64,000 nucleotides of DNA from Laetmonice hystrix (lineage: Eukaryota). Under the pieces are notes generated by a model that worked only from the letters and a program-made list of their open reading frames with translations, did not search any database and had not been told where the DNA came from. Positions 14,401 to 56,313 of the stretch are shown piece after piece (positions within the stretch are counted from its first letter, which is position 1; each line of letters opens with the position of its first letter). The stretch is taken from contig OZ249451.1 of the NCBI GenBank assembly GCA_965235115.1, positions 16,492,001 through 16,556,000 on the forward strand. Reading direction: 5' to 3'. Made by a program: the position numbers and the translations under genes.

Positions 14401-14711
14401 ACTTCGGTGATACAGGGTAAATACAACATATCCTCGCCAGAACGCAGGTTCTTCCTGCTGGAGGACGCTCACCGAGCTACTGACTCGACCGCTGACCGCT
14501 AGGTGGGGCGGCGTCAAAGATTACCGAACGTTGCAAGAGTATGCCAGAAGAAAGTCAGTAGAGAGAGCCGAGTTGCCGAGGAGGTTTTTCTCAGGGAGTT
14601 CTGTGCGGCGGAAGTACCTCGATAAGGTAAGTTCCAAAGTTCACTGTACAGGTACAGTGTATGCCGCTTTAATTGTCACCTTTCAAATCCCAAGAACTGA
14701 GTAAAAGGAAT

Positions 14712-34600: not shown

Positions 34601-36615
34601 CTCTAAGTTGTAGGTGGACGTACGAGGTGGGCGCCTTGAGAGTTATGGGTGGACTGGTAAGATTCAAAATGGGACGTGATCAAAATCATAAAAGGTAAGC
34701 CACTCTGTAATTCGCGACGAGAATACCAAAATATTGGATTATAATGATTTGGGGCATTTCATTTATGCAAGTCCTACTATTTGGGGGTTACTTTCAGGGG
34801 AATCAGGACAGTAGATCTACTACGTAGGTGAGGTATTATGAGGCTTACATCACGAACGCCTTAGTGTACATGGTATGGTGTGTTCTCAAATATAACATTC
34901 CGCATGCAGTGTTTTTAATACATTATTAGATCCCGGTTCGTATTGTAGATTAGTGTTGGCTCCCGCATATCTTGCCCTACATTTTCGCTGTTTAATTTCC
35001 TCGTCACATTTAAGTCATTAACAAAAGCCTCAAGGAAATATGCAAGGAGACAGATTTATATATGTCCTGCATTACAATGGCTCAAGAACCATTCTTTTTT
35101 ACCATGTATACTCTGGAGTTTTGACTTCTATATGACCGGATTCTAGAGACATTTTATTAATATAAACTGAAGGAAGTAGAAAAGAAATATAATAACGACC
35201 TTTCAGGAGTTGTGCGTCATCACAAAGGTCGTTTTTGACTTATGGATCTTCATGATGGCAGCAGAGGCATGCATACTGATGGTGGAAGCAGTTTTGTCGC
35301 TCGCGTCAAGTCTTCACTCGACCCCTCCAACCTATATGTATAGTCCTTGACCTCGTAATGGTGGTCGTACCTTAACCACACTGTCACATGTAAGAGTAGA
35401 CCGAGTCTACAGACCTCAAACTGATGACTACAGGAACGCCTCATGGCTTCGAGTATGCTACCCAGTCCTCCCCCAAAATAGAAACTCCCTCATTGGACTT
35501 GAAATGTATCCCTTCACTAAACTACTATACGTAGTAAACCGTTTGAGATGGGGCAGTATATACCATGCAGCATTGCTTGCTGATTTTATAACGGTTCGAC
35601 CTTTGAGTGGTTTCTATTTGTAGTTTAAAGGCAATTTGAAGATTTTCAGGTTGTGAAGTGAAGGGATGTTTCATAGCAATCGTCTGTTATAATAAAACAA
35701 CCTCTTAAAACACATAGACACACAGAGTGTTGACGGACACACAGGGGTCGTTGTATAACCTTCCCCTTCTTAAATTTCCCATTTATTTGCGATGCATTCT
35801 ATAGCGATCAGAAGGGAATTCCCAACAAAGGTCAAATGTAACAAAGAAATGGGTCAATGAAGGACAAACTGATAACATTCCTTTTGTATACCCCACCCTC
35901 CTTCACAGTCTAGGCGAAAAAAAGACGAAAATGCCCTTCAAGCTTGGTTAAGTGACATATACCGCGGACCAGGCCGTTTATTTCTATAATAGGCCAATAT
36001 TGTGATAACCTACTTTGAGCTAGAAACGGAGAGCTCTGTAGAAATATAAGTACACAGACTTTGTTTTTGTGGAGTTACACAAACCGCAGTAACAACGCCC
36101 GCTTTAAGCAGACGGTCAAACACTATCGGTTTTATAGGGAGAATGAAGAAAGGCTTATTGTAAGACATATACATATACGCAATAAGGTATTCCGGTAATA
36201 GAGGCAAGGATATAATCGTGTGGCGGAGCACGTTCTGGGATCTTAAAACTTTATATCGATCAGAGTTCTTCTCTCTTGGGAAATGATTATCTTACAACTG
36301 AATGACCTGGCCATCGGACGACCTTTCCAGACAGAGTTGACTGGCCCACAACAGCTGAGGTGCATGAAATGCCAAAGTGTTGTTTTGAAGAAGTGGATAC
36401 TTTTTATTCTCATGCGGTCGCACCAGACGCTCTAAGATCAGCCGAAACCTGCATTAACAGCCGTGTTTATGTCGTGTTTTAAATACTTGGAGAACTTGTT
36501 CAGGCCCTAGGTACGCAGCAAGGGCAGAAAAGTTCAAATGTTTAGTTTGTATATATGTGCCTTTCAAAGTATTTCCCTTCACTTCTTTGATTTTCGTTTA
36601 CTTCTGTCTTTTCAG

Positions 36616-36687
36616 AAAGGGACTTCAAGGCAGAGCCGGGCCACCTATTCAGTAAGAATCAGGAAGGGTTGAAGACCTCTACGAAAG
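36616..36687 (+). other. Candidate small exon upstream of the giant exon, with two possible donors (36651 and 36687)
   Basis: Acceptor CTTCTGTCTTTTCAG| at 36615; donors CA|GTAAGA (36651/36652) and AAG|GTACGC (36687/36688). The 36-nt form is open in all three frames, so coding status and frame are unresolved. Confidence 0.5.
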
Positions 36688-37004
36688 GTACGCACATAAT
36701 GGTGGTAACCCGTCCCGAGTGTAGGCATGGGGGGTCCTAAGCCGACAATGTATATGTTTGGTGGACCTATCGTCCTTGAATAGTACTAAGAGTACCGAGC
36801 CAAAATAATATCCTAAGGTAAGTTACTCTGTCTAGGAAGTAACCTGTAATTTCTATATATATTTTATTATTATTGGACAAAGTAAGCTGTTTAGTATAAG
36901 ATGTGGAAAACACTATGCTAAAAGGACAACTGAAACGTACTGAAACATAACATTGGTGTACTTCACTCTTTGATATATTGTCCACATATTTCTTCTCCTT
37001 GCAG

Positions 37005-37319
37005 AAACTCCCTGCTGAGAACCACGTACACCGAAGTCAAGATGGCGCAGCCAATGGCATCCGAAATTATGTACAAGAAAGAAGGCAAACTCGGGATGAC
37101 AACATTGTCTTTTCGCAGCAAACAGTACACGTTTCCCAGCCTCATAGTAAAACCGGATATGTGCAGCTCCGACGACCCAAACGCCGAGGGAATGTGCGTC
37201 CTTCTCGACGTGGGTCTGCTCTGCCCCTTTTGTACAGGCACCTTCTCCGCCAAATTCGTGCGCAGCCATGCGCGGCTTGCAATTTCTCAGACTCCCACTT
37301 TCGATATGGCTTCCGGTGA
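37005..37319 (+). other. Second open reading frame (104 codons plus stop from the acceptor) overlapping the start of the giant ORF in another frame
   Basis: ORF track 36978-37319. From the acceptor in phase 0 it reads KLPAENHVHRSQDGAANGIRNYVQERR...KTGYVQLRRPKRR...RYGFR*. Confidence 0.35.
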
Positions 37320-40300
37320 GGCACAGGCAATAGAAGGTGTAGCAGCACAGCAGCCATTGGAGGGTTCCGTGCATCCCGAACATCCCCAATGCTGCTTCAC
37401 ACACGCGGGTACGCAGACACAACACTCGCATCCGGAATCTGATCCCGACTCCGACCTCGAGTTGAGAAGATCGGTGGAGAGTGAATTGGAAGGGAGTGGT
37501 ATCCACGTTCATATTTCTCCTAACAGACCTGGAGTGAAACCCAGGGTCGCAAACGTTGTCCCATTGGGTCGGCAAGTGGGGCAGCAAAGTCAGCACGGGC
37601 ATCCACAGCAACAGGTACCGCCGATGTTGTACCCAAGGCGAAGTCAAGGCGAACCAAGACCCAGGGCCCCGATTCCCCGGGAGGGATCTTCAATCTATGT
37701 CCAAGAAAAGTCCTCTCATTTCATTGTCAAACATGATGTGACCAAGAAACATCCACAACAAGCTCCCAGAAAGTTTCCACCCACGATAGCACCGAGGACA
37801 CGCCCCCTTGGAGAGCAAAAGGGGACGTCACCGCCGACACCACAGAGGCGGCCGACACGGCAACAAGATAGGCGGTCAAGGGGACCACAAATTGCAAACA
37901 GTAAAACAAAAAGAGTTTCTGCAGCAAGACGAAAACGTGGTAGCAGCGTTGAAAGACAAGAAATAGTGTATGAGGGGGAGAACATAGCTTCAGGAGGGTA
38001 CCTTGAAACTAACCTCGATGACTTTTCACAGAGCATAAAAGCAGAGAAAGAAGGGCAGCATCGACGTATGCCTGCCAGTGCTGTGTCCAATGGTGAAGGC
38101 AGTGGACATAGCAGTGACTATGGGAGCATGGACTCGCCGCGCAGAAAAGGTGACCATCGAAGGACACCAGAGTCGGAGGAACCGACAGGTGTTGTTAAAA
38201 CAGCTGATGAACCTAAACAGCAGGTTGTTCCCCCTGTGGTAACAAGGTCGGAGGAAAGCCCTCCAAGTGTAAAAAGTACACAACATGAAAGCTTAGAGAG
38301 GCCGTCCACCTCAAGATATGGAAAAGGGATGGATTGGGCCAGTGACTATGATATTAGACATCCAAACCACCCAATGAACCGTCTTAGAAATGTTCAGCCT
38401 CCAAGTAAAAGGACTATTCAATCAAATGCAGTATCTGCAATACATGCCAGTCATAATCCAAGTGAGGAAACTGGAAGAGCTCCGCAGTTTAGACCACGTA
38501 CAGTTTCAGACACTACAGAAGATATTCGCTTTGCTAACGATAGAGATGTTGACCCCCAAGACCCACCGGAAACGACAGTAAAAGAAATACTGGAAGAAGC
38601 AGCCAAATATATCAAGGCAGATGCTTCAGAAAAACAAAGACAGTCAACCTTTGAAAGGAATGAAACTGAAATCGTACAGATACGGACCGAAGAAACGATA
38701 TCAGATTACTCAGGTGAACAACCTGAGATCAAGCCTGACACTGAGGACAGTGTTGAACAGGTTTTGCAAAAACCTGTTGAACAAAGTATTTCCACTGAAA
38801 ACGTCGGAGGACCAATGTCAGTACCTGAACAAGTTAATCTAAAATCCAGTGAAAATACAGAGGTCCAGTGTGTTGTACAGCAGGTGTCCGAAGAAGAAAT
38901 GGACATTACATCAGAAAGCGTTTTCAGAGTTGTAGAAGGTGCTGAAGCTACATACGCCCCAGAATCCAGTAGCGATGAATCAGATACTGGTTCCGAGGTC
39001 GTGAGTGAAGTCTTTCATCCAGAGGAGACTGTAGATGAGATACTTGAGAGTGTTGAAACTGAGACATACAGTCCAAATTCTACTCTGAGTCGTGCCTTTA
39101 CTGGACCCCGGCGTAAAAGGAAAAAGAAAGCCAAACGGCATGGAAGGCCACCCGCAAAAGCTCCCAAGGAGCTGACGGACTATGAAGTCTCACAAATAAA
39201 TGATACATTTCCTGAATCAGCAACACAAGAAACGGAATTAAAACAGATTGAGCGTCCTCAAGATCCTAGAAAAGGGAAAGTTCCACAACAAGTAGAGTCA
39301 AAAGAACTCTATGCAGCAATTTCAAGAATTGTGGAAAAGAATTCGAAGCCAGAGAGTACTGGCAAAAGTGAATTGCATCAGGTAGTTTCACGGGTAATTG
39401 AAAGTGAAATGAGAACTCCCAGTCCAGAAACTATGCTAGAGGAAATCCTAGAAGGGGTGGGTACTGATGAAGAAACGGTTCCTGACTCACCTAATTATGA
39501 TAAGAAACATTCAAAAACAACAATGGCCAATATGGATTTCCAGACAAATACAACATTCTCTTCTGTGGAGCTCCAGCAATCCATAATGTTGCAAGAAAGC
39601 GAGCCTGAACATAAGAAAGTAATAACATCGAGGTCTTCTTCTCGTAACAGTCTGCAGACCACACTGACGTCGTTACAGGCACTTCAGACAGAGGCTCACG
39701 TCAGTCCGTCCAGCTCATGTGAGTGCTTACCTGAAGATGCCGCTGACACGGGATCTATGGAGAGGTCTGTTTCATCATATAATGGTACATCTGAGAATTC
39801 AGCTGATGATGATGTCAGAGACTCGGAAAGTTCAGAGTTCCACGCGTCAAACGTTGGCGCTGGTTCTGAAACGTCCATAGAAAGGATAATCGATCGGACC
39901 CTTTACTTGACCGACAAAATCATCGCAGCTTATCCGGAACTCGGGCAGTCAGACGAAAAAGACGTGGACCATGATGCTGTCCTTGCTAGCGTTGCAACGC
40001 AGAGCTCATTCTCTGATTCTGATGATGTCATTGATGCCCAGGAAGACAACATCAAGCATGCTCATGAAAATGTCCTCCATATCAGCACAGACAGTGGGTC
40101 ATCATCTTTAGGCCGAGAGGAACCGTACCAAGGTGAACGTGAGACACAGACCCCAGGAGTGTCAGCAGTAGAGCAGCCAGGAGAAGATGTAATAACAGGC
40201 GAATCAAATGATCCCGACGAGTCCTTGAACGATTCCAAAGAAGAAAACGCCGACAGTTTTAAGGAAGTGTTCGACAGTGAACTGTCTCTTGTGGCAGACC

Positions 40301-43300
40301 CTGAAATTTCAGAAACCGATTTCCACTTTTCAGAAGCTTACTCTCCACCATCGGCCATGGTAAAATTTCCAACTGAGACTTGGACGAGTGCCCCAGCTGC
40401 TGAAACCACAGAGCAGTGGAGTGACATACAGCCGGATGCTGAAGCTGGAAGTCGGGAGGAAGACCCACAAGTGAGAAGCATGATTCTTGACCGAGTAACA
40501 AAAGATTTGTACAACATACAGCATAGTCTGACATTGGATGGTGAAAAATGGTTGATGGAGGACTTCTACCAAGATGCTGAAATGACTGAACTTGAAAGTA
40601 TGTCAAGCCAAGGGACTCTCGAGAAAAACAGGCTCAGCACAGAGATACAATTTCCTCCTGAGGCTTTGGAGCAAACAACCCGTGACAGTCTGGATGACGT
40701 TAACAATTCTAGTCTGCGGATGGTACCAAGAAAGGTACAATTTTGGGTTCCTGATAGAAATGAAGAGGTCGTGGACCAGGACCCAGAAACAATTGAAGCC
40801 TTTGAAACGGTTGAGAGAAGTCTTAAAGAAGTTGAACAGGCCATGAAGGAAATGGCTGGACTAAGTCCTAGCACAGATGACGAAATGCAAGAGGTCCCAT
40901 CTCAGACAGATTTGCGAGAAGTAACTGATGACCAGTACAATAGTGAGCACACCATAGAAGATGTAGATCAACTTGAAAGCAGTTGTAACGAGGACTTCGG
41001 AAGTGAATTTGAGGATGTTATAGAGGCAGTGGTCGATGAACAGTTGAAAGATGATGAAAGTGCTGAAGCCAAAAGCCCAGTGTGCACGCAGAAGCTAACA
41101 ACTGACATGGGTTTTATTGGTAATATTGCAGTAAGAGATGAAAAAGAGCCTGAAACGCAAATAGTTCCCAAACACTATGTCAGCCCAATCCAGTCATCTT
41201 CGTCGGAATCATTGTCTGAAGAAGGAGAAGAAGTAGTTGAAGTTCCTATTGGGCGCACTTGTGAGGACCTCATAAGAGAGGTTCGAGTCGAGAATGCCCA
41301 GGCTGAAACATTCGTCCAGGATATAGTCAGACAAGACAGCGTTCAAAGATCAGAGCTCTGTATAACTTATGTTAATATCGATGGAAGTTCATCGAGTGAG
41401 ACCGTCTCTGATGCTGTCACTGAGGAATCCGATGGTTCAGTGATTAACATGCACGTGAAAGCGTGGACTCCTGAGAGGAGGCTGGAGGGGAGAGTAGAGT
41501 CACCAAGTGATGTGACGTATGAGACAGGCCTTGGTTTTGAGAACAATACTTTCCTTGAAGACGAACCCGACACCGTTGAAACACTTCCAAAACAACGGTC
41601 TCTGAGCGATGGGGATGGCGACGACGAAGATGAAGATGACATTGAAACAATGAGAAAGATAGAAACGTTGTCATTGTCGCTGTCATCGTCTTCCGAATCT
41701 GATTCTGAGTCAAGTGCCTCTGACGACAGTTACCACAAAATTAACTCGAGCCAGGAATATTCAGCACCAGAGGTGATAGGAGTTGTCCAAACAATCTCTA
41801 GCCAGAGACACGATACACCAGAGAAGAATTCAGATACGGCTCCTGTTGCTGATGATGGCAAACCTCTTGTAGATGAGGAACACAATCTGAATCGATATAG
41901 AACTGTCGCTACATTTTCCCTGAAAGAAAAGGAAACTAACAAACCAGAAAAAGAGCTGACACATATTGGCACCTTTACTGAAGATTTGGACCACTCCACT
42001 GAGACCTCTGCCTGTTCCGATATTCATTACGATGAACCACGTGATCATCACCACCAACCACCAAGTGAAAATTTAGAAACTCCCCCAGGCAGCTGGGAGG
42101 AAGTGCTAGCAGAATCCACCACAAATGTAGCCTCTTTTGAAACAGAAGATGTATTGTCCAAAGAACAAGCGCAAGAATTTCTGCGCCAGATGTTTGGTAC
42201 TAGCCAAAAAGATGCCCATGATCAGGATAATAAAAAACTTGATGTATGTACTGCTGTAGTCCCTGCAGGAGAAGACGGCGAGGTTACCTCAGAGGAGGTC
42301 AGCACCCAGGAAGTAACCTTAGTATTTGCCTGGCCGAAAAAACCAGATGAGGTCATCAGGAAATATGAAGATCCGTACAGAGAAATACATTTGCACCGCG
42401 TGACAAAAGTGAAAGACTTTGACATTGAAGTTGTTGAAGGGCCAACTGTGACAACGATAGAAAGGCCTTCAGTTCCAGCTATCACTCTCGAGAAACAGGA
42501 GGGTGAAGATCTTTCAAAAAAGCTACCAGCAGGTAAAGATGCAATAGTTGTGCACCAGAAAAGGAAAGATACTGTGACCAAAAGAAAGAAACAGTCCAAA
42601 CCAGAGCAGGATACGGTCGGCATGATGACAGAAAAAACTACGGAAAAAGGCAAACTGGCTGCATATAGCAAAGTTGAAGATGACGAAGGTAATGGCTGTG
42701 ACCACTCAAAAAGCAGTGACATGGAAGTTGACCTAGATGAGCTCCTTGCGGATACCTCGGACGTGTCTGAGACATTTAGCGTTGGAGGTGAGCCTGGAAA
42801 GCCTAGCCAAAAGGATGCTTCTGCACAAACAGACAGCTTGCAGCACGATTCATATGCTTTGTATGATAGCCAGCTGAAGCCCAGCTTGCTTGCAATGGAT
42901 ACTGACTCTACGGATGAGGGTTCATGCATGTCTGATAGTAGCCAAGGTGAGCTATGCACGCACACAAGCACTTTCACACAAGGTAACATGGCCCATCAAG
43001 CGCATGCAACCACTGCAAATATACCTCTCTATTCTGAAGCAATTTCTAATAAGAGTGAGCAGCAAAACCTTCACATGCTTGAAGACAGGGATGAACCCTT
43101 TTCCCAATACATAACATTAACCCATAGTAATAGTGCACCTCGCACATCTAACATAACCCTGATAGATAGCGATGTAAATAGTTCGCATGGCCCTATGGTT
43201 TGCAGCATCTCCTCACAGCATCAAAAAGCTTTTAGCCATAAGTCACAGAGCATGCCTAGACCAAAGGGTCTCGAAAACATGTACAGAAATGTGCTGGATT

Positions 43301-44551
43301 TTGGTACAGATGTTACAGTGGTTTCAACAGCTTCACCCATGCCCCTATATACCGTAGGCAGTAGGCTTGATAACTTGTTTAAAGGCAAGGATGTCATTAG
43401 AAAGTGTTGCCACGCACGAGGGTCTGGCAACCAGCTTTTGATAGTCGAGGTTGGGAGTGGGAGATTGAGTAGGGCAGCCCCCTGTGACCTATCAGATAGA
43501 GGGCCAGCATTCAGTATTGACCATTTTTCCAGTAGGCCTTATCACTTTGATGGCATCGCATTGAAGGACCACATCGGAAAAATAGCCTGTGTAAACGTAA
43601 CCTGTGAAATGGGCGATGATGAGCTTGTGCATCACATGGAAACTGCTATTCGGTCAATTCCTGAAAATGCATTGCAACCCCAATGGTGTGACCCCTGTAC
43701 GGAGAATGCAGATCAGATTGATATGGTTCAGTTTGGAATGGCTTGTCCCAATCTCAAAGGCTGTGTGCTTCCCAATGCTAAAAGCTATGAAACTCCCTGC
43801 TTTTATGGATCGTGCAACAAAGACAATATGAACGCAAAGGCAACGACAGGCTCAAACAACCTTCTTCTTGCTGAGGTCGCCCAGGTCACTGTTCATATTG
43901 GACTGTGTGATATACAAGGCCAGAAGGTATGCATTGCCTTTGGAGTATATCACGGTTCTTATAGTTTTCATCTGAAGTCACCATCCGACATCGTGTGCAC
44001 GACATCCTGTGTCATTGCTCAAGTTGCACCTTCTGGAACAGCAATGGCTTTACATGTGTTCGAAGTGAAGTTTTCAAGTGACTTGCAAGGTGAAACGGGT
44101 CAAGGTGAAAACATCGCGGGCGAAGATATTCAGATATCTGAAGAACAGCTAGTATTTGCAGATGAAGAAACATGTGTCTGCGATGATTCCATGCCACAGG
44201 ACGCTACGACAGTAGACATTTGTGGACCTCATACTGCCCTAGTATCCATTGTTGGATCGAGTGCAGATGTCCTGGACACACACAACGTGTTACCCGTGTT
44301 GTGTACTATGCAGACGGATGCAGAAGATGGCTGTGCCCAAGCCGAGTGTCTACATGAGTTCAGTGAAGAGCTTTTGCAGTGTGTTGGAGAGACTGTTGAA
44401 TTGGCTGATAATGGACCGTTGTCCCCTGACCTCTCTCGTCCCGTTTCTGACACAGAAACTGGGAGTGGTCATGGCGGATCTGGTAGTAAGAAAAAGAAGG
44501 GTGGTGATGATGGTTCAAATGAGGACATGAGTGGTAACCAAGATGTAAACC

Positions 44552-44583
<32 letters not shown>

Positions 44584-47500
44584 GGTGGTGGTGGTGATGG
44601 TCGGGAAAGCAGAGGTTCAAGTGGGAGTGGTGCAAATGGTTCAGGTGGTAGTGGAGGTGATGGTGGTGGTGACGACTGGGACAAAAAACGAGGTCATGGT
44701 GGGAAAGGTAAAGGGAAAAAGAAAGATGCTGAAGATGAGGATGAAGACGATGATGATGATCAAGACGAAGAGGGCGAGGCGTCCAAAGCTGACGGAAATG
44801 ACAAAAGTGGCAAACGTGAATCTGGGAAAAGGCAAAAGGTTGGCACTGCAGGAGCATACACCATTGAAAGAGTTTATCATCATCTTTCGTTCAAGCCAGT
44901 TGAGATGCCTCAGAGGAGTGATACTGATGCATTACAGATGGCCCAGGGTCCAGAGCGTGTTGTCCCGATTGTGACGCCCAAACCAATGAAGTCGGACGTC
45001 AGATCTTCGACTGAAGAACAAACCCTCGTCAAAGAGGACCTTCTGACTAAGATGACAGCAGGAGCACGTGGGGGTATGCTGGATGTGAGAGCTATGTTTG
45101 AAGGGATGAATCGTGGGGAAGGATTTGATCATAAAACGATGGATACCCTAACAGGCAGCAGTTTCAAGCCTCTTTTACCTGAACAACCGTTTAGAGAACA
45201 TTGTGTTACACAGGAGAGTGTGAAATACGACATAGAGGAAAGCCAGGGGTATCGTGATGCATCCCGCTGGGAAACGACTAAAAGAATCTCTATGCCAAAG
45301 CCAAAACTTCTTTCTATGAAGCAGGAAGAGACTGACACCTCTGGCTTTCATGAATTCGTGAAACCTTTATCACAGACTGAGCGAACGTTTGGAGAGTCTC
45401 ACGTTGAACGCTTACATAAAGGAGAACAGTATTTGAGACAAGAAGAACAGATAATATCCGAAAAGCAGATGGAAGCGGACGACTTTCCTTCTGCTTCAGA
45501 AATCTTGGCGTCTTTCAGGAAAAAGGCCAGAAAAGAGGAATGCAAGGATCGTAAGGATACCGTAGAAAAGTGTGAAACAGACCCAGTAGGTAAGGGTGGC
45601 TTGAGACGAACAATTATTGAGGTGCATTCGCATGACACACCCGCAGCAGCTCCAACTGAGATAGTCAGCCTGGAAAATAATGAGACGTCATCTCAGGATG
45701 AAAGCACTGATTTCCAAAGGCGAGTGATATCTGACACAACAACGTATAGCAGACAGCAGCGATCCGAACAAAGTACATCTGTACATTCTCAAGCAGCCAC
45801 GGATGGCACTACCAACACAATATATCCTGGCATAAGAGAAGAGCGTCGACCGGATGCGTTACCATCTGAGGAATGGCGTAAGACGACTGACGTTATCAGT
45901 AGTAGACCTCCTGTACATCCATCCAGAAGGAAACCGAGTGACTCCCAGGAGGACGACTCCATGAACATTTTTACTATGGTGAAATACTTGAATAAACCTG
46001 ACAGTGAGACAGTCTGGAAGCGCACGTCAGATGGATCTCAAGAGAGGAGAACGACTAGTTTTACTGATACAGCTCCAGTGGGAATTGTAGTAGACAATCT
46101 GCCTGTCAAAGGGCCATTTGTTATTCCGAGGCACACTGATAGGTATGCCATACATTCACGACCTCTGTGCCATGCTCAGGTACTTCGAGTACTGACGACC
46201 TTTGATAATATAATCAGTTGCCAACCGATTCACCCAGTGCGTGTGCTCTACTTTTGTGCTGTTATATCATATGAAGAAAGTGCTTGTACTACCTTTGGAT
46301 GTATTGATATGGTACAATGCTACGATGGAGTAGAGGATGAGAGTTCAGTGTACAGTGAGTCTACTGGGTACAGCGAAGATGAGTATTTGACTCAAAGCAG
46401 TAGGTCGGAGGCTCTCAGTGAAAGTGGAGGTGACGATGATGCCTTGAGAATATACCATGATGGAAGACTAGTGGCTAAGTTACACAAACAGAGAATGGCC
46501 AGCACAAAAGATGTTGTTGTGCGGAATGAACAGAACATGCAGTCACTGCCCTTGTTGGAATCCTTTTCACCAGTTGTTAGACATCAGAGTTCGAGGGCGT
46601 TTGTTGAGGATAACATTCCTGGGCGATATGCAGAGGAGCGCTATGACACTGAGATGTTCCATCAACAACTTGGAAACAATGCATCTTTGAGCGGAATGCA
46701 CTCCAAAACCTTTAGCCACTACAAGGCAGGAACATGGGATGAGGACAGTGACACACTTCGACGTATGCCCATTAAGGTGGAACACGTGAGTGGGCCAGAT
46801 CAACGTGAAGTAATGTCCATGTCCAGTATGCATGGCGTTGGAAAGGACAAATTTGATGCAGTCATGGATACACTCAAACGAAATATCCTTGGTGTTGGTA
46901 GTGATCGCACACAATCAAGTCCAGCATTTCAGAATCAGTATGAGAGGTACCAAGAGATCCACCCGGTTACACAGCAAATACAACCGCCTTCTTATGAAGA
47001 CATACAAGGTGATGGTGTTCTAAGGGTCTACTACGATGAGAATATGATAAGGAAAATAAAGAATCAACTAGGATCTTCCTATGGAACGACGCTGAACGAT
47101 GATGGCAATGTCCTTAAAGTATACCATAAGGGAAAGCTGGTGGCGGAAATTAATCGTCGATTTGATCATGTGCATTCAGTTCAGGACCAGCCAGGTGAGA
47201 AGGTTGCTCCCATGGCAGGCAGACCTTCTGAACAGAAAGTTGAGTTTAAAATAACTCCATCTCTCCAGCCACCTCAAAAGGTCAGACAGTCCTCTGTGCA
47301 CGTCTTGAAGAGAGAGGATAGCAAGCTTGATACGACGGAGTCTGTGGCAGACAGTATTAGCATAGCCAGCAACCTTGATAGCGAAGATGAATTTTTCTTT
47401 GAAGAATACACTGTTGAACACAAAGTACCTATCGGTGATGATGTCATCAATGACGTTGGCGAGCCACGTGTAACAGAAATGATTTCTACACACTCCAGGA

Positions 47501-48002
47501 ATAGTGACGCTCCATACAAGCCTCCTGCTCCGGCCCCACCGCCCAGGTCAAGCAGCACACTGAGTGCTAAGCGGTATGCTGAGGAAGTGGATAGGATCAT
47601 GATCGAAAATAGAGAAAAGGCTAGAAAGGCTGCAATAGCAAGACAGCAAAAGGAACTCAGGGCTCAGAAAATACAAACTCATTCTGCACGGGTTAAGAGA
47701 ACAGAGCCTACAATTCAACAACCTCCAGTGAAGGTATCAAAACCGGCTACATTTACCAGGCCAGTGCCTCCATGGAGGCAGCAAGGTCCACCCCTAGAGA
47801 GCCAAATACGATACAAATCGCCGGAGAGAGACATTGACACCTTTTCAGAATGTAGCACCAGCAGTTGGATGACTGAATCAGATTCATCAACAGTCACAGA
47901 AAATCGAACTCCTGGATCCTCTCCCCCACCATTCATGTATCAAGCTGAGGTTACAAGAAGAGAAGAGACAGCTCCTAAGTTGCCGCCATTCAGAGCCCCG
48001 CC

Positions 48003-48045
<43 letters not shown>

Positions 48046-51000
48046 CCTCAAGCATATACTCTGCCACATCAGTATACAAAGGTTACAAAGACCTCAGCGA
48101 AGCAAGATTCAAAAATGTCAGTAATTGATGATATAAAACGACAAATTGATGAGATGTACTCCAGCCTAACAGCAGATAGGCCAAGTAGGAAACCTGTCCC
48201 GAAGTATGCCAAGAGGCAACCTGCTGCTCCCAAGCCTGCATTGCCAAGCACGCAGAAGGCCAAGCTAGTTGAAGAGGTCAAGAAACATCTGTATGAACTG
48301 AGGTCACAATCTAATCGGCCACTTACTCCAGAATACAAGGCTGAGCTGATGAGAGAAATCAAAAGGCGCATTTATGAGTCAAGGCTCCAGCAGATACAAA
48401 CTAGCAACCGGAGTATTTCTGCAGGGCATCGTTGGCTTGAGCAAACCCAAAGAACCAGGGAAATGGATGAGGTTTCAGAGGCAGACAGCACGGCAAGTTG
48501 GACGACGGTGGCCAGTGGAACAACAGCTACAACAGGACGAAATACTCCCTTCAATGAGGTGACAGTAATTGTTGATCCATATGAAGACCAGTTTGAGGGC
48601 AGATACCCAGGCACGTATCCAGCACGATACCCAGTTGATCCAAGAGATCCATCCAGGTACACTGACGTGTCTAGTCACAGTAGCTACAGTGACCAACATC
48701 ACAGAATGTCAACATTTAACCAGAGGCCCAGACAACCGGCCCCTGTAAGGAGGGATGCGTATAACCAGTATCAGAGAATGCAACAAATTCAAGGTTATCA
48801 GAACTTTCAAAACGTGCAGCAAATGCAAGGCACCAGCTATAGGTATCAGCAGCCTCAGGTCGAACGGGCTCCTTCCCCTGATCCCATTTATATTGAGCAC
48901 GTTGAACTTCAGGAAATAGCTCGACAGGATGTAGAGAGACCTTCATTGCCACCTGAGCAACCTGATCCTGAATATGTTGAACAGGTTGAACTTCAAGAGT
49001 TTTCACGCCAAAACCTTCAGCCATCGTCTGCAACGATGAAACCTCAGAGAGCAAATAGGATATCTTGGTCAGGAGAGCCGAATGCAGCACCTCTTTCAGC
49101 GAGAGGCAAGACGAGTTCTTTGCCAGTCCTGCATGGAGACATCTACGATAGTATGTACCGTATGCTAGCAAGTGCATCCACACCTATTGAGGAGGAGCAA
49201 GTATATGATAACCTTCCAGGACATGTAGGCTATGCAGGCACTCAGCCAGGCGATGCAAAGGACCAGGGATATGAAGTTATACCGGCAATGACCAGTGCAG
49301 AAGCTCGCCTTAAAGCACAAGAGTATATTCGGTCTGCATACAAGTTCATTAATGAAGATGCTGATACGTATGATAATTTACCAGACAACCTCCCGGTACA
49401 GAGGACAATGCCCCAGAGACAGCAAGCCAGCAGGATGGACCGGTCCAGCGGGCGTGGACGGCAAGGGACCAGTGTCGGCCAGGCGTCCCATCAGACTATG
49501 CGGCAGGAGGCTCACAGAGGCAGGACAACGTCTACTGGAGGTTATGCAAGCACAAGGGTTGGAAGTCCACCTGGCACAGTTTCACCGACACCACCACCAT
49601 ATAGCAACATCATGAGAGGTAGGGTGGGTAGTCCGACGTTCGTCGAGACAGATCCAGATGCAACGTATGACAACCTCGCATCTGTAAGAAGAACCATACC
49701 CAAGGGATCAATGACAATGCCAGCACAGGGTTCTACACGTATGTCATCTCAAGGTGTAGCAAGACAGATGTATTCTGGGACACATGGACAAAGGAGTCAA
49801 CAGTCTGTGCAGAAATCAGGGCCATCTCAAAGGCAAGTAACAACACAAGGACGTCATACTTTGCCACAAGGTATGAGCAGTCAAGGGGTGTCAGGAATGC
49901 ATGTGGCTTCCAATCAAAGAATGGCCTCAAGAATGACAGCTTCACAAGCCTCCGCTTCAAGAGCAGGAACATCTCGCATGATGCATTCGCAGGGGTCAAG
50001 TACTGACAGGTTAGTGATTGAAAACCCAGATGAACTTGCTAGCAGGGAGCGGTCATCCAGTACAAGCAGTTGTGCAAGCTCTATTCCGCAGGTAGACCTT
50101 GACGCGCTTGATAAGCTTCTTTTGGAGATAGGTTACGAAGGTGGTCACTTTTCTCCAAATGGTAGCTTAGTTGAGGATGACGGAGCTTATGCAACTATAC
50201 CAGCACATACAGTGACAGGTACTTTTTCAGAAAATAAGGTATCATTTGACGGTTCATCCAAAGATGACATGTGTGCTGGTGTTCCTCATTTTCCTGTTGA
50301 TGTTTTAGATGTACCTCCTGAACTGAAACTTCAGACTCATCCTAAATTATTAAGGAGCGATCGTGATGAAATGCTTAAACGTCTTGAGCAGGTCCGAAGT
50401 GTTGCTAAGGTAGAGAAACGCTCAAAATCCCAGTTGCAAAATGAATATCGATCAGAGTTGAAACGCTATATCCAGGGACTGACAGCGCCTCAAGTTAGTG
50501 GTGTGCAGAAAACAGAGCCAGGCCCGAAGACAGAAGAACACGACATATACGCTACAGTGGACAAAAGCAGGACAAAATCAAGGACAGCAACACCATCCAA
50601 CACAGCCCCATGGAATCAGAGAGAAAAAGATTCACATCTGTCCTCCTTAGAGCATTCACAACAATACAGGCAGGAACATGAAAAACTAGTGCGGCAAGAA
50701 CAGTGCGAAGATTACAGTGAAGAGGATGTGCCCGTATATGAACGACTGACCGAGTTTCAGAAACCTACACTGAAGCAGATTCATGAGCACAGAAAGAACC
50801 TGAAGCCCTCTCTTGAAGTCATCAAAGGTATACACGATCAGAAGAAGCTGCAAACGGCATTGAACCAAATGCAACAGCAGCAGGAGATACAAAATCAATT
50901 TTCGAAGGCAGCTATGTACACAGAACGATATGGCAAAGTAAAGTCTGGTTCAAATAAGACCTCAATGCAGAAGACCAACAATATGAGGCACAGGGAAAGG

Positions 51001-54000
51001 GAGGAACAGCCAGTACAGACACAGAACATAAATTATAGTCAAGACGTTCGTCACTTTGACAGATATTTTGACCAGTATCCCCAGCTGAATACTCGCTTTT
51101 GGGAAGAAGAAAGGAAAAGCATGCCAACTTCACGGGAGAGTACGTCACAATCATGGCGAGAACACATTGCTCAAGCACCACCTCTACTCAAGCCGTCTTC
51201 AAGTGTGCCGCGAAGAGAGACTCAAGGAGTTGAACCAGGTCCAGCGCCGTATGATGAGTCGCCGATGTCCTCCCCAAAAGGTCAGCATCGCATCCAGCTA
51301 GAATTGCAGCTTGAATCAATCAAAGAGGAGTCACACTTCTCTTCTGATTCTTCTTCCGATGGTCAAGGCTGTCTTGCTTTGCCCCAGGTGCTTCAGAAAT
51401 ATAATTACACATTCCCCAAAATGTCAACTTACAGCACACACACACAAAAACATAGACAAAATATCCGTAATAAGCACCAACTGCACCATAATTCCAGACA
51501 GTACAATGCATCACAAAAATTCCAAACACTTCCCCCCTCTAGACTGTCAGATATTATAGAAGAGTCTGATTCTTCACCAGATCGCAACACGGGGTCGTCT
51601 GACAGTGAAGGTCACCGGTTTGCATGTCATGAGAGGCATCGTGACGATAGCATTGAATCTCATCCAGTTGACCTCACTGACACAAAACCAGGCAGTAGCC
51701 TGACACAGGATCAATCTATAAAAGACCTCATTCACACCATGGAAGACTATTATTCAAGCTCTAGGACCACAAGGTCGAATAGCCGTCAAAGAACTTCAAC
51801 ATTTGCTCATGCAGGTAAAAGAGAAGTGATTGACGAACCCTTTGATGCAGGTAACACTCGTACCATGTCAAGGTATTTTTCAAAATTGCCACAGGAGAGT
51901 TGTAATGATTCAATGGGCTCTTCAAGTGGTAAAAGTAGCCCGAAAACATATATTTGGCGAACCCCTGAGATGGAACGAGGCATTATCATAAAGGGTTTTA
52001 TTTACGAGCAGATCTGTTACAAATTTAATGAAGCATGCCTTCAGGAAACATCTAGATTCGTGTTAGAGATTACCAGTAGCCCTATGGATTGTTTCGTAAC
52101 CGCATGCACACAGCAAATAGGATACCAGATTCCAGTTAGACTTCGCCTGGCAAAGCGCCTTCCGAGTTTGCCGAGTCAGCAAGATGCAAGAAGTTACTTT
52201 GATGCTGGTATCTCCCTTGCGGAAGAAGGTTGCCAACATAGTTGGGTTGTGCAAAATATTTCAGAATGCGTTTTGTTTGCATGTGTTCCTCTGGTTTCTG
52301 ACACCGTTGCCTCACACAAAATGGCTTATCTTTCTAGGGAAGTCATAAATATAAAGCCCCAAGAGGGGGAGAGAGATGAAAGAAAGAAACATTATGGCCT
52401 TGGCACATCCATTATCAATCAAAGAGCTTATCCCATGGAAAGTAATGGATCAGCCAATACCTTTGCAGTTCAACATAAGATTCAACCTATTGAACCCAAC
52501 CAGTCAAATTCCCTAGCTTCTAACGAGAGACCAACGCGTATGGTAGATATGTATTCTGAGAGAACTAATATGTATGGGTTCAAAAATTTCCAAGTGGACG
52601 AATGTTCATCACAGACTCTCACAGAGACAGAAACAGCTCAAGTCGTATGTGACGAGTGTGCAAAGTCTCGAAGTGTTTTTGGTGAGACAATATGTAGTAA
52701 CATATGTCATGTTAAAGCAAGCAGTGAAGAAGCTATATCCGATCTCTGTGCATGGTTGCAAAAATCTCAGCCCCAGAAGAGATCAAGTAGTGAAGGGCAG
52801 CTTCAGGATATCAAATGGTCAGACACAGAGTATCCCCAGGGTAGAGACAGTGTGTTAACTGACGGACTGTATACATACAGCAGTGAAAGCGCTATATCCG
52901 ATGTATATAGTGATGACGGGTCTTGTAGCCCTGATCAAAAAGAAAGTGAGTCTGGTTCACCATGCTTGTATTCCACAGCGCAGTCACCAATCTCATCTAG
53001 TGACAGTGCAGTGCAAAGTCTACAGAGTCTAGCCATCAGTCCTGGACATTCTCGGACCATGCTCAATGATTACATGCCTCTCAGTTACTCAAATAGGATC
53101 CTAGCAGCAAGCAGCGAGAGTGCCATAGCCGATATTTATAGAGGATCTTCTTCAAGTAGTGACAGTGTGGTCGACAATCTTCAAGAAGTTGACGTGTCGA
53201 GTGTTACGGACATCTACCAGCGCATTATGTCGCTTACAGAAGGCATCGATTCGACTATATATAAAGTGATCGAATCAGAGGCTTCGTTAGATACATCTGC
53301 AAGTATGGAGGATGTCAGTGATCATGAGGAGATTTCTGCTTCAGGTCGATCTTTGGATTGGGGTTACAACGAGAGAAAAGGAAATAAATATGAGGGAAGA
53401 TTAATAGCCTCAAATGGGGAATATGCAAAGGAGAAAATGTCAGATGATGCCAGTAAATGCCACAAAAAAGAGGTAAAGCTTGCAAACGATTCAACTAAAA
53501 AGGTTTTCATTGAAGTAGATAGGGAGCAGGGAGTGGTAGGCGATGATGTGAAAAACATAGGTCAAGAATCAAAGACTTCAGGCCATGTAGAATTAGCTGA
53601 TACCATTAAAATGCCCCTGTCCAAGAGAGAGACAGAACGTGATATAGCAATTCGAAGAAAACCGCAAAATGAGGAATGGTGTCAGCAAACGTATGACCCT
53701 TCAGTTATACGATATCGGATGCCAGTAAATACAGAGGAACGTTTTACGAGTGTTCAGCATGACACTGGGAAATGCTGGAACATCAGGAAAGTCGAAAAGG
53801 TAACTTTGAATAGGATCCCTTTTGATGCAAAGTCAGAAACTACGGAACGTCATGTACTACGCCCCCTTTTGGAACAGGACTCAATTACGGCTAGGGCAGT
53901 GGATGCAGCGCCCCACATTTCTCCAGAGACGAGTGCATCATTGTTAAAACGGAAGGATATCATTCCAGATGGTAAATCACGACCCAAGAAAGACATGAAA

Positions 54001-55416
54001 GGCGGGGAAAATGGGCATGATTCCATGGAAGTGGGTGCTTCTCTTCCAAACGTGACAACCAAGGCAACACAGAGCGTTTGTAATGAAGCTCTGAAAGCCT
54101 CCAACAAAGACGTGTTGTCCCTTTCGAAGCCATTGATGCTAAATAAGGATGAATTGAAAGCAATAGATGAGACAACCGCAGTTAAGGGGTCACTTTTGAT
54201 CACACAAGACTGGCTCCATACCTATCCAGGGGGACCTGCTGACAAGTATAGGCAGCTCAGCAGCAGATTTCAAGAGCACCTTGTCTCAGCATGTGGGAAA
54301 ACTGACACTGCCTTGGATGAAGAGTCCTTGCCGGTTTGGTACAATATGAAGGGCAGTGGCGACATATCGGAAACATCCTCGTCTACTGACAGTTCCAACT
54401 GGGGCAGTCAAGAGACAGTAATTGAGAACCCTAATTCGGCCATCCACTACCAAGCTGTGCCAGTTCATCAAGTTATGCCAAGTTATGTGTCAGTAGTTTC
54501 AAAGGCCAGTAGTGCCCCTGTGACTCCGGATATTGAGATGCAAAGGAAACGATTATCTGATCTCCTTTCTGGTAAGATACCTGTGATGCCTCCCACGGAA
54601 CCACGAGAATTGAAAGATACACATTCGCCATCTTCACCCGAGATAGAAGTAACTAACGAAATCACTTGTGTAAATTTGAATGCCGAGGTTACTAGAGGCA
54701 GGGTAGGGGGCAAATACATGGAAGACGTAATCAGGCAAACAGGGAGGAGTTTAGAAGATTCGGTTAGTGAAGCCTCTAGCATGTTTTCAGGTCAGGTATC
54801 ACGTCATAATGATACACTTTCAAAAGGATCACTGGAATATCAAGCAGAATCTCCTGAGGAGAGTCTACCGTTAACAGAGAGAGACTCCACGCCCTCTTCA
54901 GAAGATCCAGAGAATATCGTAGATACTCCCGGAGGGGTGATATCTACCAGAGATCTCATAAGTTTCTCTGATGACGAAGAAATATCAACTCAGGGGACCA
55001 ATGGCAGTGTGTGCACGCAGGATGCAGGCCTAGAGCTGCCTACATTGCAAGAGTTTGCATGTGGCAAAGCCACATCTAGAGTTGAAAACGACCGGGATGA
55101 GTCTTTAACAAATGCACAACAGAGAGCAGAAGAAATGAGAAATCTTTTTGAAGAGCAACTGACGGTCTTTGACCGTCTTTGTGCTATGAGAGAAACCTTC
55201 AGGGATATTCTCGACCATTCGTCGGAAGTTCCGAAGGTGGAGTGTCAAGGTGAAGCTGACCTTGACGGAGCACGGCGGAGTTCCTCAGCGCCGAACGTTT
55301 TCGTTGTAACAGATGACCATACAGACACTACCCTAGATAACACAGTGTCGTCGTGTCCAGTGTATAAAAGCAAATCTTGGGCAAACTATGAAGACCTGCC
55401 GTATACCGATGTTTAA
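37042..55416 (+). CDS. Giant (6124 aa from first ATG, roughly 670 kDa) predominantly disordered protein encoded by one ~18.4-kb exon; uncharacterised scaffold-like protein
   Basis: Stop-free frame 36970-55416 in the ORF track. Splice acceptor TTCTTCTCCTTGCAG| at 37004; ATG 37042 in strong context (AAGATGG). S/E/D/T/Q/P-rich composition, no signal peptide or transmembrane segment seen. AATAAA at 56162 and 56241. The true N-terminus may extend into upstream exons via a phase-2 junction at 37005. Confidence 0.9.
44554..44595 (+). repeat. Coding (GGT)8-GCT-(GGT)5 poly-Gly tract, followed at 44731-44772 by an Asp/Glu run
   Basis: Directly visible; in frame within the giant ORF. Confidence 0.95.
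48004..48045 (+). repeat. Uninterrupted coding (CAA)14 poly-Gln tract
   Basis: Directly visible; in frame within the giant ORF. Confidence 0.95.
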
Positions 55417-56313
55417 GTCCCCTCGTATTATAACCTGCTGTAAGGACGCCAATCAACTAAAATTAAAATGGCATGAGCAGTTCTTGTCATCGATGTGTAC
55501 GTTCCTATTTCGTGAGGTATAATAATTGGGGTCTATGCAATTGCTGTAACTGAAAATGATGGACAGAATGGCGGTCTTTAGAGGCAGTTTTTGAACCATT
55601 TTTAGAGTTTCATGATTATGTGCTTTTCAGTAAGCACCCTTGAGTGAGGCTCACCAGTTTCGAGGTGTTATGCAATGATCTTGTATATCCATGTATAGTT
55701 AGTTGGTCAATCACGCGTAAAATAATATCGTGGTGCTTGGGTTTTTTGCTTGGATAGTCTTGAAATCAAGATTAATATTGTTGAACTGGTCGATTTTGAG
55801 CAAAAATTATTGGTGATGGTTGTAGCTTAAGAAACGATTGTGTAACTGGTGTCGCTTCTCCCAACCCCTTTTACTGATCACTTTTAGTTCTTAATACTTA
55901 ATCATCAAAGCATACATGGTTATGATTAGGAAATTTGAAGTGGATATTCTTGTAAACTTAAGGTTGGTAGACTACACAACTATGATCATGCATGTGTGTA
56001 TATTATGTAGAGCATTGACGCATGATGGCTACACAATCCGTTGTACTTTGCACACAAACATACCATTGTGATATGTCGTACATACAGAACAACATGTTTT
56101 AAACCAAGTATATGATTTCTAAGTAGCATGTTGCTCACTTAAATCGTTCTACGTATGACGCAATAAATGAAACTTAATAATCGTCACCGTGATGGTAACT
56201 TACACATTGTACCGATCTGCTAAGAATATCCATTGTCCGTAATAAAGTGCTAAGTTTTCAAAATCCTCAGAAGCATTCTAATCGTCTGTCACCTTATCTA
56301 TTAACTGTTTCAG

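What the first reader, a model, noticed from the sequence alone, without database searches (positions are those of the whole stretch)
37005..55416. An 18.4-kb single coding exon encoding a ~6100-aa orphan scaffold-like protein
Seen: more than 6100 codons with no stop, starting at a clean splice acceptor and followed by an AT-rich UTR with poly(A) signals. The protein is mostly disordered, with no ankyrin, spectrin, Ig/Fn3, mucin PTS-repeat or long coiled-coil array that I can recognise. Established: coding exons this large are rare and mostly known from titin (about 17 kb), mucins and giant ankyrin isoforms, most of which are far more repetitive. Inference: a non-repetitive frame this long must be under selection. 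Its motif content (see separate findings) suggests a lineage-specific cytoplasmic signalling or cytoskeletal scaffold.
Basis: partly seen in the sequence, partly recalled or inferred. Interest (0 to 1): 0.85.

Follow-up and report, generated by a model that had tools for sequence, protein, structure and literature searches.

The report
Giant one-exon disordered protein gene
A (probably annelid) worm genome has a real, transcribed gene whose whole 6,124-residue, mostly unfolded, non-repetitive protein is written in one 18.4-kb exon; two other genomes keep it, no known protein family matches it, and its role as a docking scaffold is a guess from short motifs.

Summary
Window 36970-55416 (+) is one stop-free frame of 6,148 codons, with a chance probability of about 1e-157. 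It has a coding-type codon-position bias and no internal repeats.

A transcript-like public run shows a GT..AG splice from a 72-nt exon (36616-36687) into 37005, and an earlier exon ending at 14626. Both upstream exons are non-coding, because exon 2 carries an in-frame TAA. The CDS therefore runs from ATG 37042 to TAA 55416: 6,124 aa, 682 kDa, pI 5.1, all in one exon. That run holds 81-86% of the exon's sampled words.

The gene is single-copy in its 627-Mb genome. It is not a strict orphan:
- One ENA protein (6,451 aa, one ORF) is colinear at 59.5% identity.
- A second ENA contig carries a colinear copy at 35-38% identity, as two giant ORFs split by one frame shift.
- Against that second copy, synonymous sites are saturated, yet 24 conserved islands persist.

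Pfam, PDB sequences, the ESM Atlas, an exhaustive HMMER search and a fold search found no known family.

Conserved motifs suggest a multivalent scaffold: an LD-like helix, YDNL and YATIP tyrosine motifs, three basic clusters and a C-terminal PDZ ligand. That function is untested. I class it as a new family of a known kind, of moderate interest.

The parts
14108..14626 (+). Exon 1, 5' UTR. The 3' end is exact; the 5' end is only the minimum implied by the transcript contig.
   Evidence: The 30 nt that precede exon 2 in the X4 contig map uniquely to 14595-14624. The donor GTAAGT lies at 14627. The contig carries 517 nt upstream of exon 2. I did not check that those 517 nt are contiguous in the genome.
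36616..36687 (+). Exon 2, 72 nt, non-coding. It carries a TAA in the frame of the main ORF.
   Evidence: read laying piece 36614-36685 of X4 record 25, with AG before and GT after. Translating the joined UTR shows the in-frame stop.
36688..37004 (+). Intron 2, 317 nt, GT..AG
   Evidence: The joint 36685->37003 'skips 317, GT..AG (cut +2)' appears in X4 only. The three DNA-like runs read straight through.
37005..56270 (+). Exon 3, the giant terminal exon: 37 nt of 5' UTR, the whole CDS, and about 0.85 kb of 3' UTR. The 3' end is approximate.
   Evidence: X4 has depth only from 37003 onward in the laid stretch. X4 holds 0.81 of the sampled words of 36500-46400 and 0.86 of those of 46401-56300. 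AATAAA at 56162 and 56241.
37042..55416 (+). Complete CDS: 6,124 codons plus TAA. The protein is 682 kDa with pI 5.06; 67% of residues are disorder-promoting, and there is no membrane-type hydrophobic segment.
   Evidence: This is the first ATG after the in-frame stop, in the context GTCAAGATGG. Both orthologues start at the same Met.
37042..37287 (+). N-terminal conserved module (aa 1-82), the best-conserved part. C52, C61, C64 and H76 are invariant (CPFC...H), a possible zinc knuckle.
   Evidence: Alignment A1: 81% and 63% identity to the two orthologues. AlphaFold2 is not confident here (pLDDT 39). The Atlas gives only weak C2H2-like leads (0.87).
37927..37947 (+). Conserved basic cluster 1 (RRKR, aa 296-302), inside a three-way conserved island
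39103..39147 (+). Conserved basic cluster 2 (aa 688-702, a Lys/Arg run), NLS-like
42556..42600 (+). Conserved basic cluster 3 (aa 1839-1853)
44461..44778 (+). Low-complexity Gly / Lys / Asp-Glu tract (aa 2474-2579)
   Evidence: This tract is the source of the two weak hits P0003 and P0004.
46435..46488 (+). First 'LR[IV]YHDGKLVA' hairpin motif (aa 3132-3149), kept in all three species
   Evidence: AlphaFold2 predicts two strands at low confidence.
47008..47160 (+). Second and third hairpin motifs, forming a roughly 50-aa strand-helix-strand-strand-strand unit (aa 3323-3373). This is the only confidently folded piece found.
   Evidence: pLDDT is 63-79 for model residues 351-402, against below 50 elsewhere. 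The fold search gives only generic matches at Z about 5.
48097..48621 (+). Conserved helical module (aa 3686-3860), including a Lys/Arg/Glu-rich helix at aa 3736-3786
   Evidence: Alignment A4: 85% and 52% identity.
48877..49008 (+). Two tandem P-x-P-x-Y-[IV]-E-x-VELQE tyrosine motifs (aa 3946-3989)
49120..49686 (+). Tyrosine-motif cluster (aa 4027-4215): IYDSMY and three YDNL motifs. The first YDNL is kept in all three species.
   Evidence: By my own arithmetic from the composition, about 0.02 copies of YDNL are expected by chance; three are seen.
49984..50541 (+). Most conserved C-terminal module (aa 4315-4500). It holds a Ser-rich tract, the LD-like helix LDKLLLEI (nt 50107-50130), YATIP (nt 50176-50208) and VPPELKLQTHP (nt 50311-50343).
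   Evidence: Alignment A3: 84% and 55% identity. There is a single LDxLLxx[LIV] match in 6,124 aa.
55402..55413 (+). C-terminal Y-T-D-V, a class I PDZ-ligand-type end. The closer orthologue ends S-D-I.
   Evidence: The end of the farther orthologue lies 22 nt beyond the fetched locus and was not seen.
56162..56246 (+). Two AATAAA poly(A) signals in the AT-rich 3' UTR

Best explanation
This is a real, single-copy, transcribed gene of three exons. Exons 1 and 2 are 5' UTR. Exon 3, about 19.3 kb, holds the whole 18,375-nt coding sequence for a 6,124-residue (682 kDa), acidic, Ser/Glu/Thr/Asp-rich, non-repetitive protein that is almost entirely intrinsically disordered.

The protein belongs to an uncharacterised family with full-length colinear orthologues in at least two other genomes. 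Selection has kept the frame open and preserved at least 24 short islands spread from residue 10 to residue 5292.

The most likely mode of action, inferred and not shown, is a very long flexible docking platform. Its small N-terminal module and many short linear motifs each recruit a partner, so the molecule gathers signalling and cytoskeletal or junctional proteins. The motifs are:
- a paxillin-type LD-like amphipathic helix
- YDNL, YATIP and Y[IV]ExV tyrosine motifs, which would bind SH2 domains once phosphorylated
- PxxP and PPxY motifs
- basic clusters
- a C-terminal class I PDZ ligand

Shown: gene structure, transcription, conservation, and the lack of repeats and known domains. Inferred: disorder as a functional state, every motif-partner assignment, and the subcellular site.
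For: - ORF and coding signature.
- Splice joint, non-coding upstream exons and start codon. The same Met starts both orthologues, and the farther one also has an acceptor about 35 nt upstream of it.
- Transcript-like run X4 covers only exonic parts in the laid stretch and holds 0.81 and 0.86 of the exon's sampled words, against 0.87-0.92 for the DNA-like runs.
- Single copy in the 627-Mb genome.
- Orthologue P0001 is one ORF of 6,451 aa, 59.5% identical end to end.
- Orthologue L001 is colinear at 35-38% identity from the same Met.
- Against L001, pS is 0.78 and four-fold sites differ at 64% (saturated), while pN is 0.46 and 1,605 columns are identical in all three.
- No repeats.
- No Pfam family in any of the three proteins.
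- Disorder: 67% disorder-promoting residues; AlphaFold2 pLDDT below 50 for 457 of 508 residues in aa 2973-3480.
- No signal peptide or membrane segment: the highest 19-residue Kyte-Doolittle mean is 1.63.
- Motifs and their conservation.
- The LD consensus LDXLLXXL and its binding domains (FAK FAT, GIT, alpha-parvin) are as described in PMC7703752.
Against: - No partner, localisation or phenotype is known. All motif assignments rest on consensus matching, and short motifs are common in disordered sequence.
- YxN overall is not clearly enriched: 9 seen, against about 5 expected by my own arithmetic from the composition.
- The LD-like motif ends in Ile, not Leu.
- The PDZ-ligand end is confirmed in only two of the three species.
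- Three conserved basic clusters and a Cys/His knuckle would suit a nuclear protein equally well.
- X4 is not labelled as RNA in its record; I infer that from its exon-only coverage and the splice joint. Contigs cannot prove that one uninterrupted 19-kb mRNA exists.
- The taxa of the two orthologues are unknown, so the family's range is not established.
Confidence: 0.6

Rival explanations
1. It is a giant disordered nuclear or chromatin-associated protein, comparable in build to Ki-67 or the single-exon ZNF469. The basic clusters import it into the nucleus, and the N-terminal Cys/His knuckle binds nucleic acid or a nuclear partner.
For: Three basic clusters are conserved in all three species, at aa 296, 688 and 1839. 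C52, C61, C64 and H76 are invariant. The Atlas lists weak C2H2-type neighbours at 0.87. ZNF469 is a single-exon gene for a 3,953-aa protein (PMC12226416).
Against: No zinc-finger or DNA-binding Pfam match, even at E<=5. The finger lacks the second His of a C2H2 unit. The conserved tyrosine motifs, LD-like helix and PDZ-ligand end are typical of cortical or cytoplasmic adaptors. Atlas scores below 0.9 are at noise level by the tool's own statement.
Confidence: 0.2
2. It is a structural spacer or cytoskeleton-binding giant, like the giant ankyrin inserts, MAP1B/Futsch or AHNAK. Its length and charge matter more than its individual motifs.
For: Its size and single giant exon resemble AHNAK (about 17 kb, about 700 kDa) and AHNAK2 (17,559-bp exon) (PMC10682155), and the 7.8-kb giant ankyrin-G exon (PMC12798937). 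The protein is acidic and mostly unfolded.
Against: It has no repeats, unlike AHNAK or Futsch. It has no PDZ, ANK, ZU5 or tubulin-binding domains. Conservation is concentrated in 24 discrete islands, not in length or composition alone.
Confidence: 0.12
3. It is a very divergent member of an already characterised family whose similarity the searches available here could not detect.
For: Disordered proteins diverge fast. Only three sequences were available for profiles. The word-index search missed even the known 3,314-aa piece of L001, which shows that tool's limited sensitivity here.
Against: The exhaustive phmmer search of 1.84 billion representatives with aa 2026-3225 (frame residues 2050-3249) found only the two orthologues plus two low-complexity hits. 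Profiles of two modules against PDB sequences found nothing at E<0.01. Pfam found nothing on three species. Two JGI metagenome scans found nothing.
Confidence: 0.07
4. The ORF is not a functional gene: a chance frame, a transposon or viral remnant, or an assembly artefact.
For: Nothing beyond the absence of any known domain.
Against: The chance of an open frame this long is about 1e-157. The transcript is spliced. The gene is single-copy. Three DNA-like runs read through the locus. Two colinear orthologues keep the frame despite saturated synonymous sites.
Confidence: 0.01

Closest known systems
AHNAK / AHNAK2 (desmoyokin family)
   Same: Proteins of about 600-700 kDa encoded almost wholly by one giant exon of 17-17.6 kb, flanked by small exons. 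They are largely non-globular scaffolds (PMC10682155).
   Different: AHNAKs have an N-terminal PDZ domain and a centre made of 128- or 165-residue repeats. This protein has no PDZ domain (it carries a PDZ ligand instead), no repeats and no detectable sequence similarity.
Giant ankyrin inserts (ankyrin-G 480 kDa, ankyrin-B 440 kDa)
   Same: A single very large exon (7.8 kb in ANK3; PMC12798937) encodes a long, extended, non-repetitive, motif-bearing polypeptide that works as a scaffold.
   Different: Those exons are alternative inserts inside a protein with ANK, ZU5-UPA and death domains. Here the exon is the entire protein, 2.4 times longer, and has none of those domains.
ZNF469
   Same: A gene with a single coding exon for a very long (3,953 aa), mostly disordered protein of poorly understood function (PMC12226416).
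   Different: ZNF469 carries bona fide C2H2 fingers. Here there is only one incomplete CxxC...H knuckle and no Pfam zinc-finger hit.
Paxillin-type LD-motif adaptors and tyrosine-phosphorylated docking proteins (paxillin, DLC1, PEAK/Cas-type scaffolds)
   Same: A conserved LDxLLxx[L/I] amphipathic motif, preceded by a Ser-rich tract and followed by tyrosine motifs of the YxN and YAT[IV] type. This is the logic of multivalent docking (consensus from PMC7703752; pYxN and Grb2 discussed in PMC10279719, listed but not read in detail).
   Different: There are no LIM, pseudokinase, SH3 or other folded domains. There is one LD-like motif, not four or five. Binding is untested, and the resemblance is at motif level only.

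Membership tests
AHNAK family | N-terminal PDZ domain | tested here: not met
   No Pfam PDZ hit in the window protein or either orthologue. The N-terminal module has no Pfam hit at E<=5.
AHNAK family | Central array of about 128-165-residue repeat units | tested here: not met
   Self-BLASTP finds no internal HSP at E<=1e-3. TRF finds only three short simple tracts.
AHNAK family | Giant exon of about 17 kb encoding most of the protein | tested here: met
   18,375-nt CDS inside one exon.
Giant ankyrins | ANK repeats, ZU5-UPA and death domains flanking the giant insert | tested here: not met
   No such Pfam domains. The upstream exons are non-coding.
Titin/obscurin-type giants | Ig and Fn3 domain arrays | tested here: not met
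   Pfam finds nothing.
Mucins | Signal peptide and tandem Pro/Thr/Ser repeats | tested here: not met
   The N-terminus is not hydrophobic, and the highest Kyte-Doolittle window is 1.63. No tandem repeats.
C2H2 zinc-finger proteins | C-x2-4-C-x12-H-x3-5-H unit | tested here: not met
   The invariant CPFC is followed by 11 residues and then one His; no second His or Cys follows within 3-5 residues. No Pfam zf hit. Metal binding through C52 is possible but untested.
LD-motif proteins (paxillin type) | Sequence matching LDXLLXXL in a disordered, helix-prone context | tested here: inconclusive
   LDKLLLEI at aa 4356-4363 has Ile in place of the final Leu. It is kept in P0001 and, as LDHLLVEI, in L001. 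Consensus from PMC7703752.
LD-motif proteins (paxillin type) | Binding to an LD-binding domain (FAK FAT, GIT, alpha-parvin CH2, vinculin) | not testable with these tools
   This needs spliced partner sequences, or peptides and ITC/NMR. No complex prediction was run.
Class I PDZ-ligand proteins | C-terminal X-[S/T]-X-hydrophobic-COOH | tested here: met
   The window ends ...Y-T-D-V and P0001 ends ...D-S-D-I. The L001 end was not seen. The consensus is from general knowledge, and binding is untested.

The most novel reading that the evidence does not exclude
This is the founding member of an undescribed family of non-repetitive, almost wholly disordered proteins of about 680-750 kDa. In every genome seen, the complete coding sequence is intronless, and it has stayed so across a divergence deep enough to saturate synonymous sites. 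That would make it one of the longest non-repetitive single-exon coding sequences known. It would also be a natural 'string of 24 or more docking islands': a giant scaffold built with essentially no folded domains.
Probability: 0.5. Interest if true: 0.65.

Novelty: new variant of a known kind. Interest (0 to 1): 0.55.

Why it matters
Giant scaffolds encoded by a single exon are known (AHNAK, giant ankyrins), but they are either repetitive or attached to folded domains. This gene has 18.4 kb of unique sequence with no recognisable domain, yet three genomes keep it open and colinear.

That makes it a clean natural case for asking how selection maintains a protein of more than 6,000 residues made almost only of linkers and short motifs. 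It also raises the question of why such a gene stays intronless.

The 24 conserved islands give a ready list of candidate interaction sites to test. For annotation, it shows that annelid gene sets contain very large uncharacterised proteins that domain-based pipelines will label only as 'hypothetical'.

Tried and rejected
- Pfam on the whole protein in two halves, on both orthologues, and on six conserved modules at E<=5: only sub-threshold noise such as COG6_N, BACON, SH3_15 and Myb_DNA-bind_5.
- PDB sequence search with profiles of the N-terminal module and of aa 2973-3480: nothing below E 0.028.
- ESM Atlas on three parts: best scores 0.81-0.87 (C2H2-like, EXPH5/Dendrin, RVT_3/RNase H-like). 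All are in the range the tool reports for shuffled sequences, so I rejected them as leads.
- AlphaFold2 of the N-terminal 100 aa: pLDDT 39, unusable, so no fold search was made.
- AlphaFold2 of aa 2973-3480: only about 50 residues are confident. VIA-align against PDB representatives gives generic strand-helix-strand matches to glyoxalase/VOC half-domains at Z about 5, below the tool's noise level of 7-8. Foldseek against AFDB clusters gives TM below 0.1. I rejected both.
- The Cys-rich, hydrophobic stretch aa 2038-2469 looked like a folded domain. Its cysteines are not conserved and its identity is the lowest in the protein, so I no longer treat it as a domain.
- Word-index homologue searches: the C-terminal half (region 250-1100 of a 2,690-aa query) returned nothing and missed the known L001 piece, probably swamped by low-complexity words. 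The N-terminal 180 aa in a 1,000-aa query returned nothing. Both blanks are weak evidence.
- Two JGI metagenome scans with modules A3 and A4: no relatives.
- dS against L001 is saturated, so I can report only pN and pS, not a numeric dN/dS.
- Complex prediction was not used. No specific partner sequence could be supplied unaltered, because partner domains are split over exons.


Full report
**1. The observation**

The window holds one open frame at 36970-55416 (+) of 6,148 codons. No other ORF of 300 aa or more lies between 36 and 57 kb. From the exon's own base composition, a stop is expected in 5.7% of codons, so a stop-free run of this length has a chance of about 1e-157. The other five frames carry 197-595 stops. 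Codon positions show the usual coding bias: G 33.5% at position 1, A 36% at position 2, and GC falling from 0.55 to 0.40 across the three positions.

The protein has no internal repeats. BLASTP against itself yields no second HSP at E<=1e-3. Tandem Repeats Finder reports only a Gly-codon run, an 18-nt acidic duplication and a 14-Gln run. The 172 N at 29670-29841 lie in an upstream intron and were left alone.

**2. Gene structure and transcription**

Four public runs of one sample hold the locus. When they were laid on 32000-37999, three of them covered every bin, so they behave as DNA. The fourth, X4, had depth only at 36614-36685 and from 37003 onward.

One 744-nt X4 contig joins 36685 to 37003, skipping 317 nt with GT..AG ends. 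The sequence fixes this intron at 36688-37004 and the 72-nt exon at 36616-36687.

The 30 nt that precede the small exon in the contig map uniquely to 14595-14624, followed by AG and a GTAAGT donor. Exon 1 therefore ends at 14626 and intron 1 is about 22 kb.

Exon 2 carries a TAA in the frame of the big ORF. The joined 5' UTR has several more in-frame stops and six short upstream ORFs. The first in-frame ATG after the stop is at 37042, in a good context (GTCAAGATGG).

The complete CDS is thus 37042-55416: 6,124 codons, all in one exon. X4 holds 0.81 of the sampled words of 36500-46400 and 0.86 of those of 46401-56300, against 0.87-0.92 for the DNA-like runs. One X4 contig of 3,527 nt starts at 37179. 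The exon and its 3' UTR are therefore represented almost completely in transcript contigs. The 3' UTR is 36.7% GC and has AATAAA at 56162 and 56241.

Two caveats apply. X4 is not labelled RNA in its record; I infer that from its exon-only coverage and the splice. And contigs cannot prove a single uninterrupted mRNA.

**3. Conservation**

The gene is single-copy in its 627-Mb, 35-contig genome. Earlier notes of this scan call the genome probably annelid; I did not test that.

A word-index search with the last 1,199 residues found one protein, P0001. It comes from ENA, is 6,451 aa long and is a single called ORF on a 170-kb contig. A global alignment is colinear from the same initiator Met to the C-terminus, at 59.5% identity with 2.7% gaps.

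An exhaustive phmmer search of 1.84 billion cluster representatives with frame residues 2050-3249 (aa 2026-3225 of the protein) found only P0001, P0002 and two low-complexity hits. P0002 (3,602 aa) lies on a 2-Mb ENA contig. It is followed directly by a second ORF of 3,314 aa. tblastn shows the two ORFs to be one colinear orthologue at 31-38% identity across the pieces (35-38% in the three largest), starting at the same Met and split by a single frame shift near locus position 20800. That locus also has a polypyrimidine-CAG acceptor about 35 nt upstream of its ATG, as in the window. The coding sequence is therefore intronless in all three genomes.

Against this farther orthologue, synonymous sites are saturated: pS is 0.78, and 64% of four-fold sites at identical residues differ. 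Non-synonymous pN is 0.46, and 1,605 columns are identical in all three proteins. Twenty-four islands with 60-75% three-way identity are spread from residue 10 to residue 5292. I could not determine the species behind the two orthologues.

**4. What the protein looks like**

It is 682 kDa with pI 5.06. Disorder-promoting residues make up 67% of it. It has no signal peptide and no membrane-like segment.

Pfam finds nothing in the window protein, in P0001 or in the second L001 ORF; the first L001 ORF (P0002) was not scanned here (its precomputed field shows no Pfam hit). Six conserved modules searched at E<=5 also gave nothing. PDB sequence profiles find nothing. ESM Atlas neighbours all score at noise level.

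AlphaFold2 on aa 2973-3480 gives pLDDT below 50 for 457 of 508 residues. The exception is a unit of about 50 residues (aa 3323-3374, pLDDT 63-79). It is built from two copies of a conserved 'VL[RK]VY[YH]..' hairpin motif; a third copy sits at aa 3132-3149. Its fold matches are generic, at Z about 5.

The N-terminal 82 residues are the best-conserved part, at 81% and 63% identity. They keep C52, C61, C64 and H76 invariant, but they did not fold confidently. A hydrophobic, Cys-rich stretch at aa 2038-2469 is poorly conserved and is probably not a domain.

**5. Conserved short motifs (a sequence-level reading; no binding was tested)**

- Three basic clusters, at aa 296, 688 and 1839, are kept in all three species.
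- Two tandem P-x-P-x-Y-[IV]-E-x-VELQE motifs.
- A cluster with IYDSMY and three YDNL motifs. YxN is the Grb2-SH2 type consensus. By my own arithmetic, about 0.02 copies of YDNL are expected by chance. The first YDNL is kept in all three species.
- A Ser-rich tract followed by LDKLLLEI. This is the only match to LDxLLxx[LIV] in the protein and is kept in all three species. The LD consensus and its FAT, GIT and parvin partners are described in PMC7703752.
- DDGAYATIPAH and VPPELKLQTHP, both invariant.
- A C-terminal Y-T-D-V (S-D-I in P0001), of the class I PDZ-ligand type.

The C-terminus of the farther orthologue lies 22 nt beyond the fetched locus and was not seen.

**6. Interpretation**

The structural claims are well supported: a real gene, transcribed, with one coding exon, non-repetitive, mostly disordered, and conserved under selection.

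The functional reading is the most economical one for a protein whose conservation is concentrated in motif-sized islands. It would be a very long flexible platform that collects SH2, PDZ and LD-binding partners at the cortex or at junctions. This remains inference, and I give the whole statement 0.6.

A nuclear role is the main rival (0.2), based on the basic clusters and the Cys/His knuckle. A mainly structural spacer role gets 0.12. Undetected membership of a known family gets 0.07.

**7. Comparison and novelty**

The closest known kinds are these:
- AHNAK and AHNAK2, with 17-17.6-kb exons and proteins of 600-700 kDa, but repetitive and PDZ-bearing (PMC10682155).
- The giant ankyrin inserts, such as the 7.8-kb ANK3 exon set inside a multi-domain protein (PMC12798937).
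- The single-exon ZNF469 (PMC12226416).

The present gene fails the defining features of each family. It shares only the general design, which is why I class it as a new variant of a known kind. Interest is moderate (0.55): the gene is striking in size and in its lack of repeats and domains, but it has no functional data yet.

Noticed in passing
window 60539-63188 (-): A convergent neighbour on the minus strand encodes Cys-rich EB modules (Pfam PF01683, E 1.8e-16 for 60539-61336). Further similar ORFs lie at 61830-62054, 62537-62881 and 62967-63188. It is probably a multi-exon secreted EB/EGF-like protein gene.
   Followed up: partly
window 3939-4033 and 4097-4191: An inverted repeat with 95-nt arms, 98% complementary and 63 nt apart. 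Short mirrored ORFs lie on both strands. It sits upstream of the gene's first exon, and its nature is unknown.
   Followed up: no
window 14108-14626 + 36616-36687 + 37005-37041: The roughly 628-nt 5' UTR carries six upstream ATGs with short ORFs of 1-29 codons. This hints at translational control of the giant ORF.
   Followed up: no
L001 20800-20806: The farther orthologue is split into ORFs of 3,602 and 3,314 codons by a one-base frame shift, inside the conserved ADSISI...FFEEYTVEHKVP island. It could be an assembly error or a real break; this was not resolved.
   Followed up: partly
window 52876-52917 and 53110-53145: A short internal duplicate of the motif SSESAI[SA]D[VI]Y (aa 5279-5292 and 5357-5368). 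The first copy is conserved in all three species. Its function is unknown.
   Followed up: no
window 14627-36615: Intron 1 is about 22 kb and contains the 172-N gap at 29670-29841. No ORF of 170 aa or more lies inside it.
   Followed up: no
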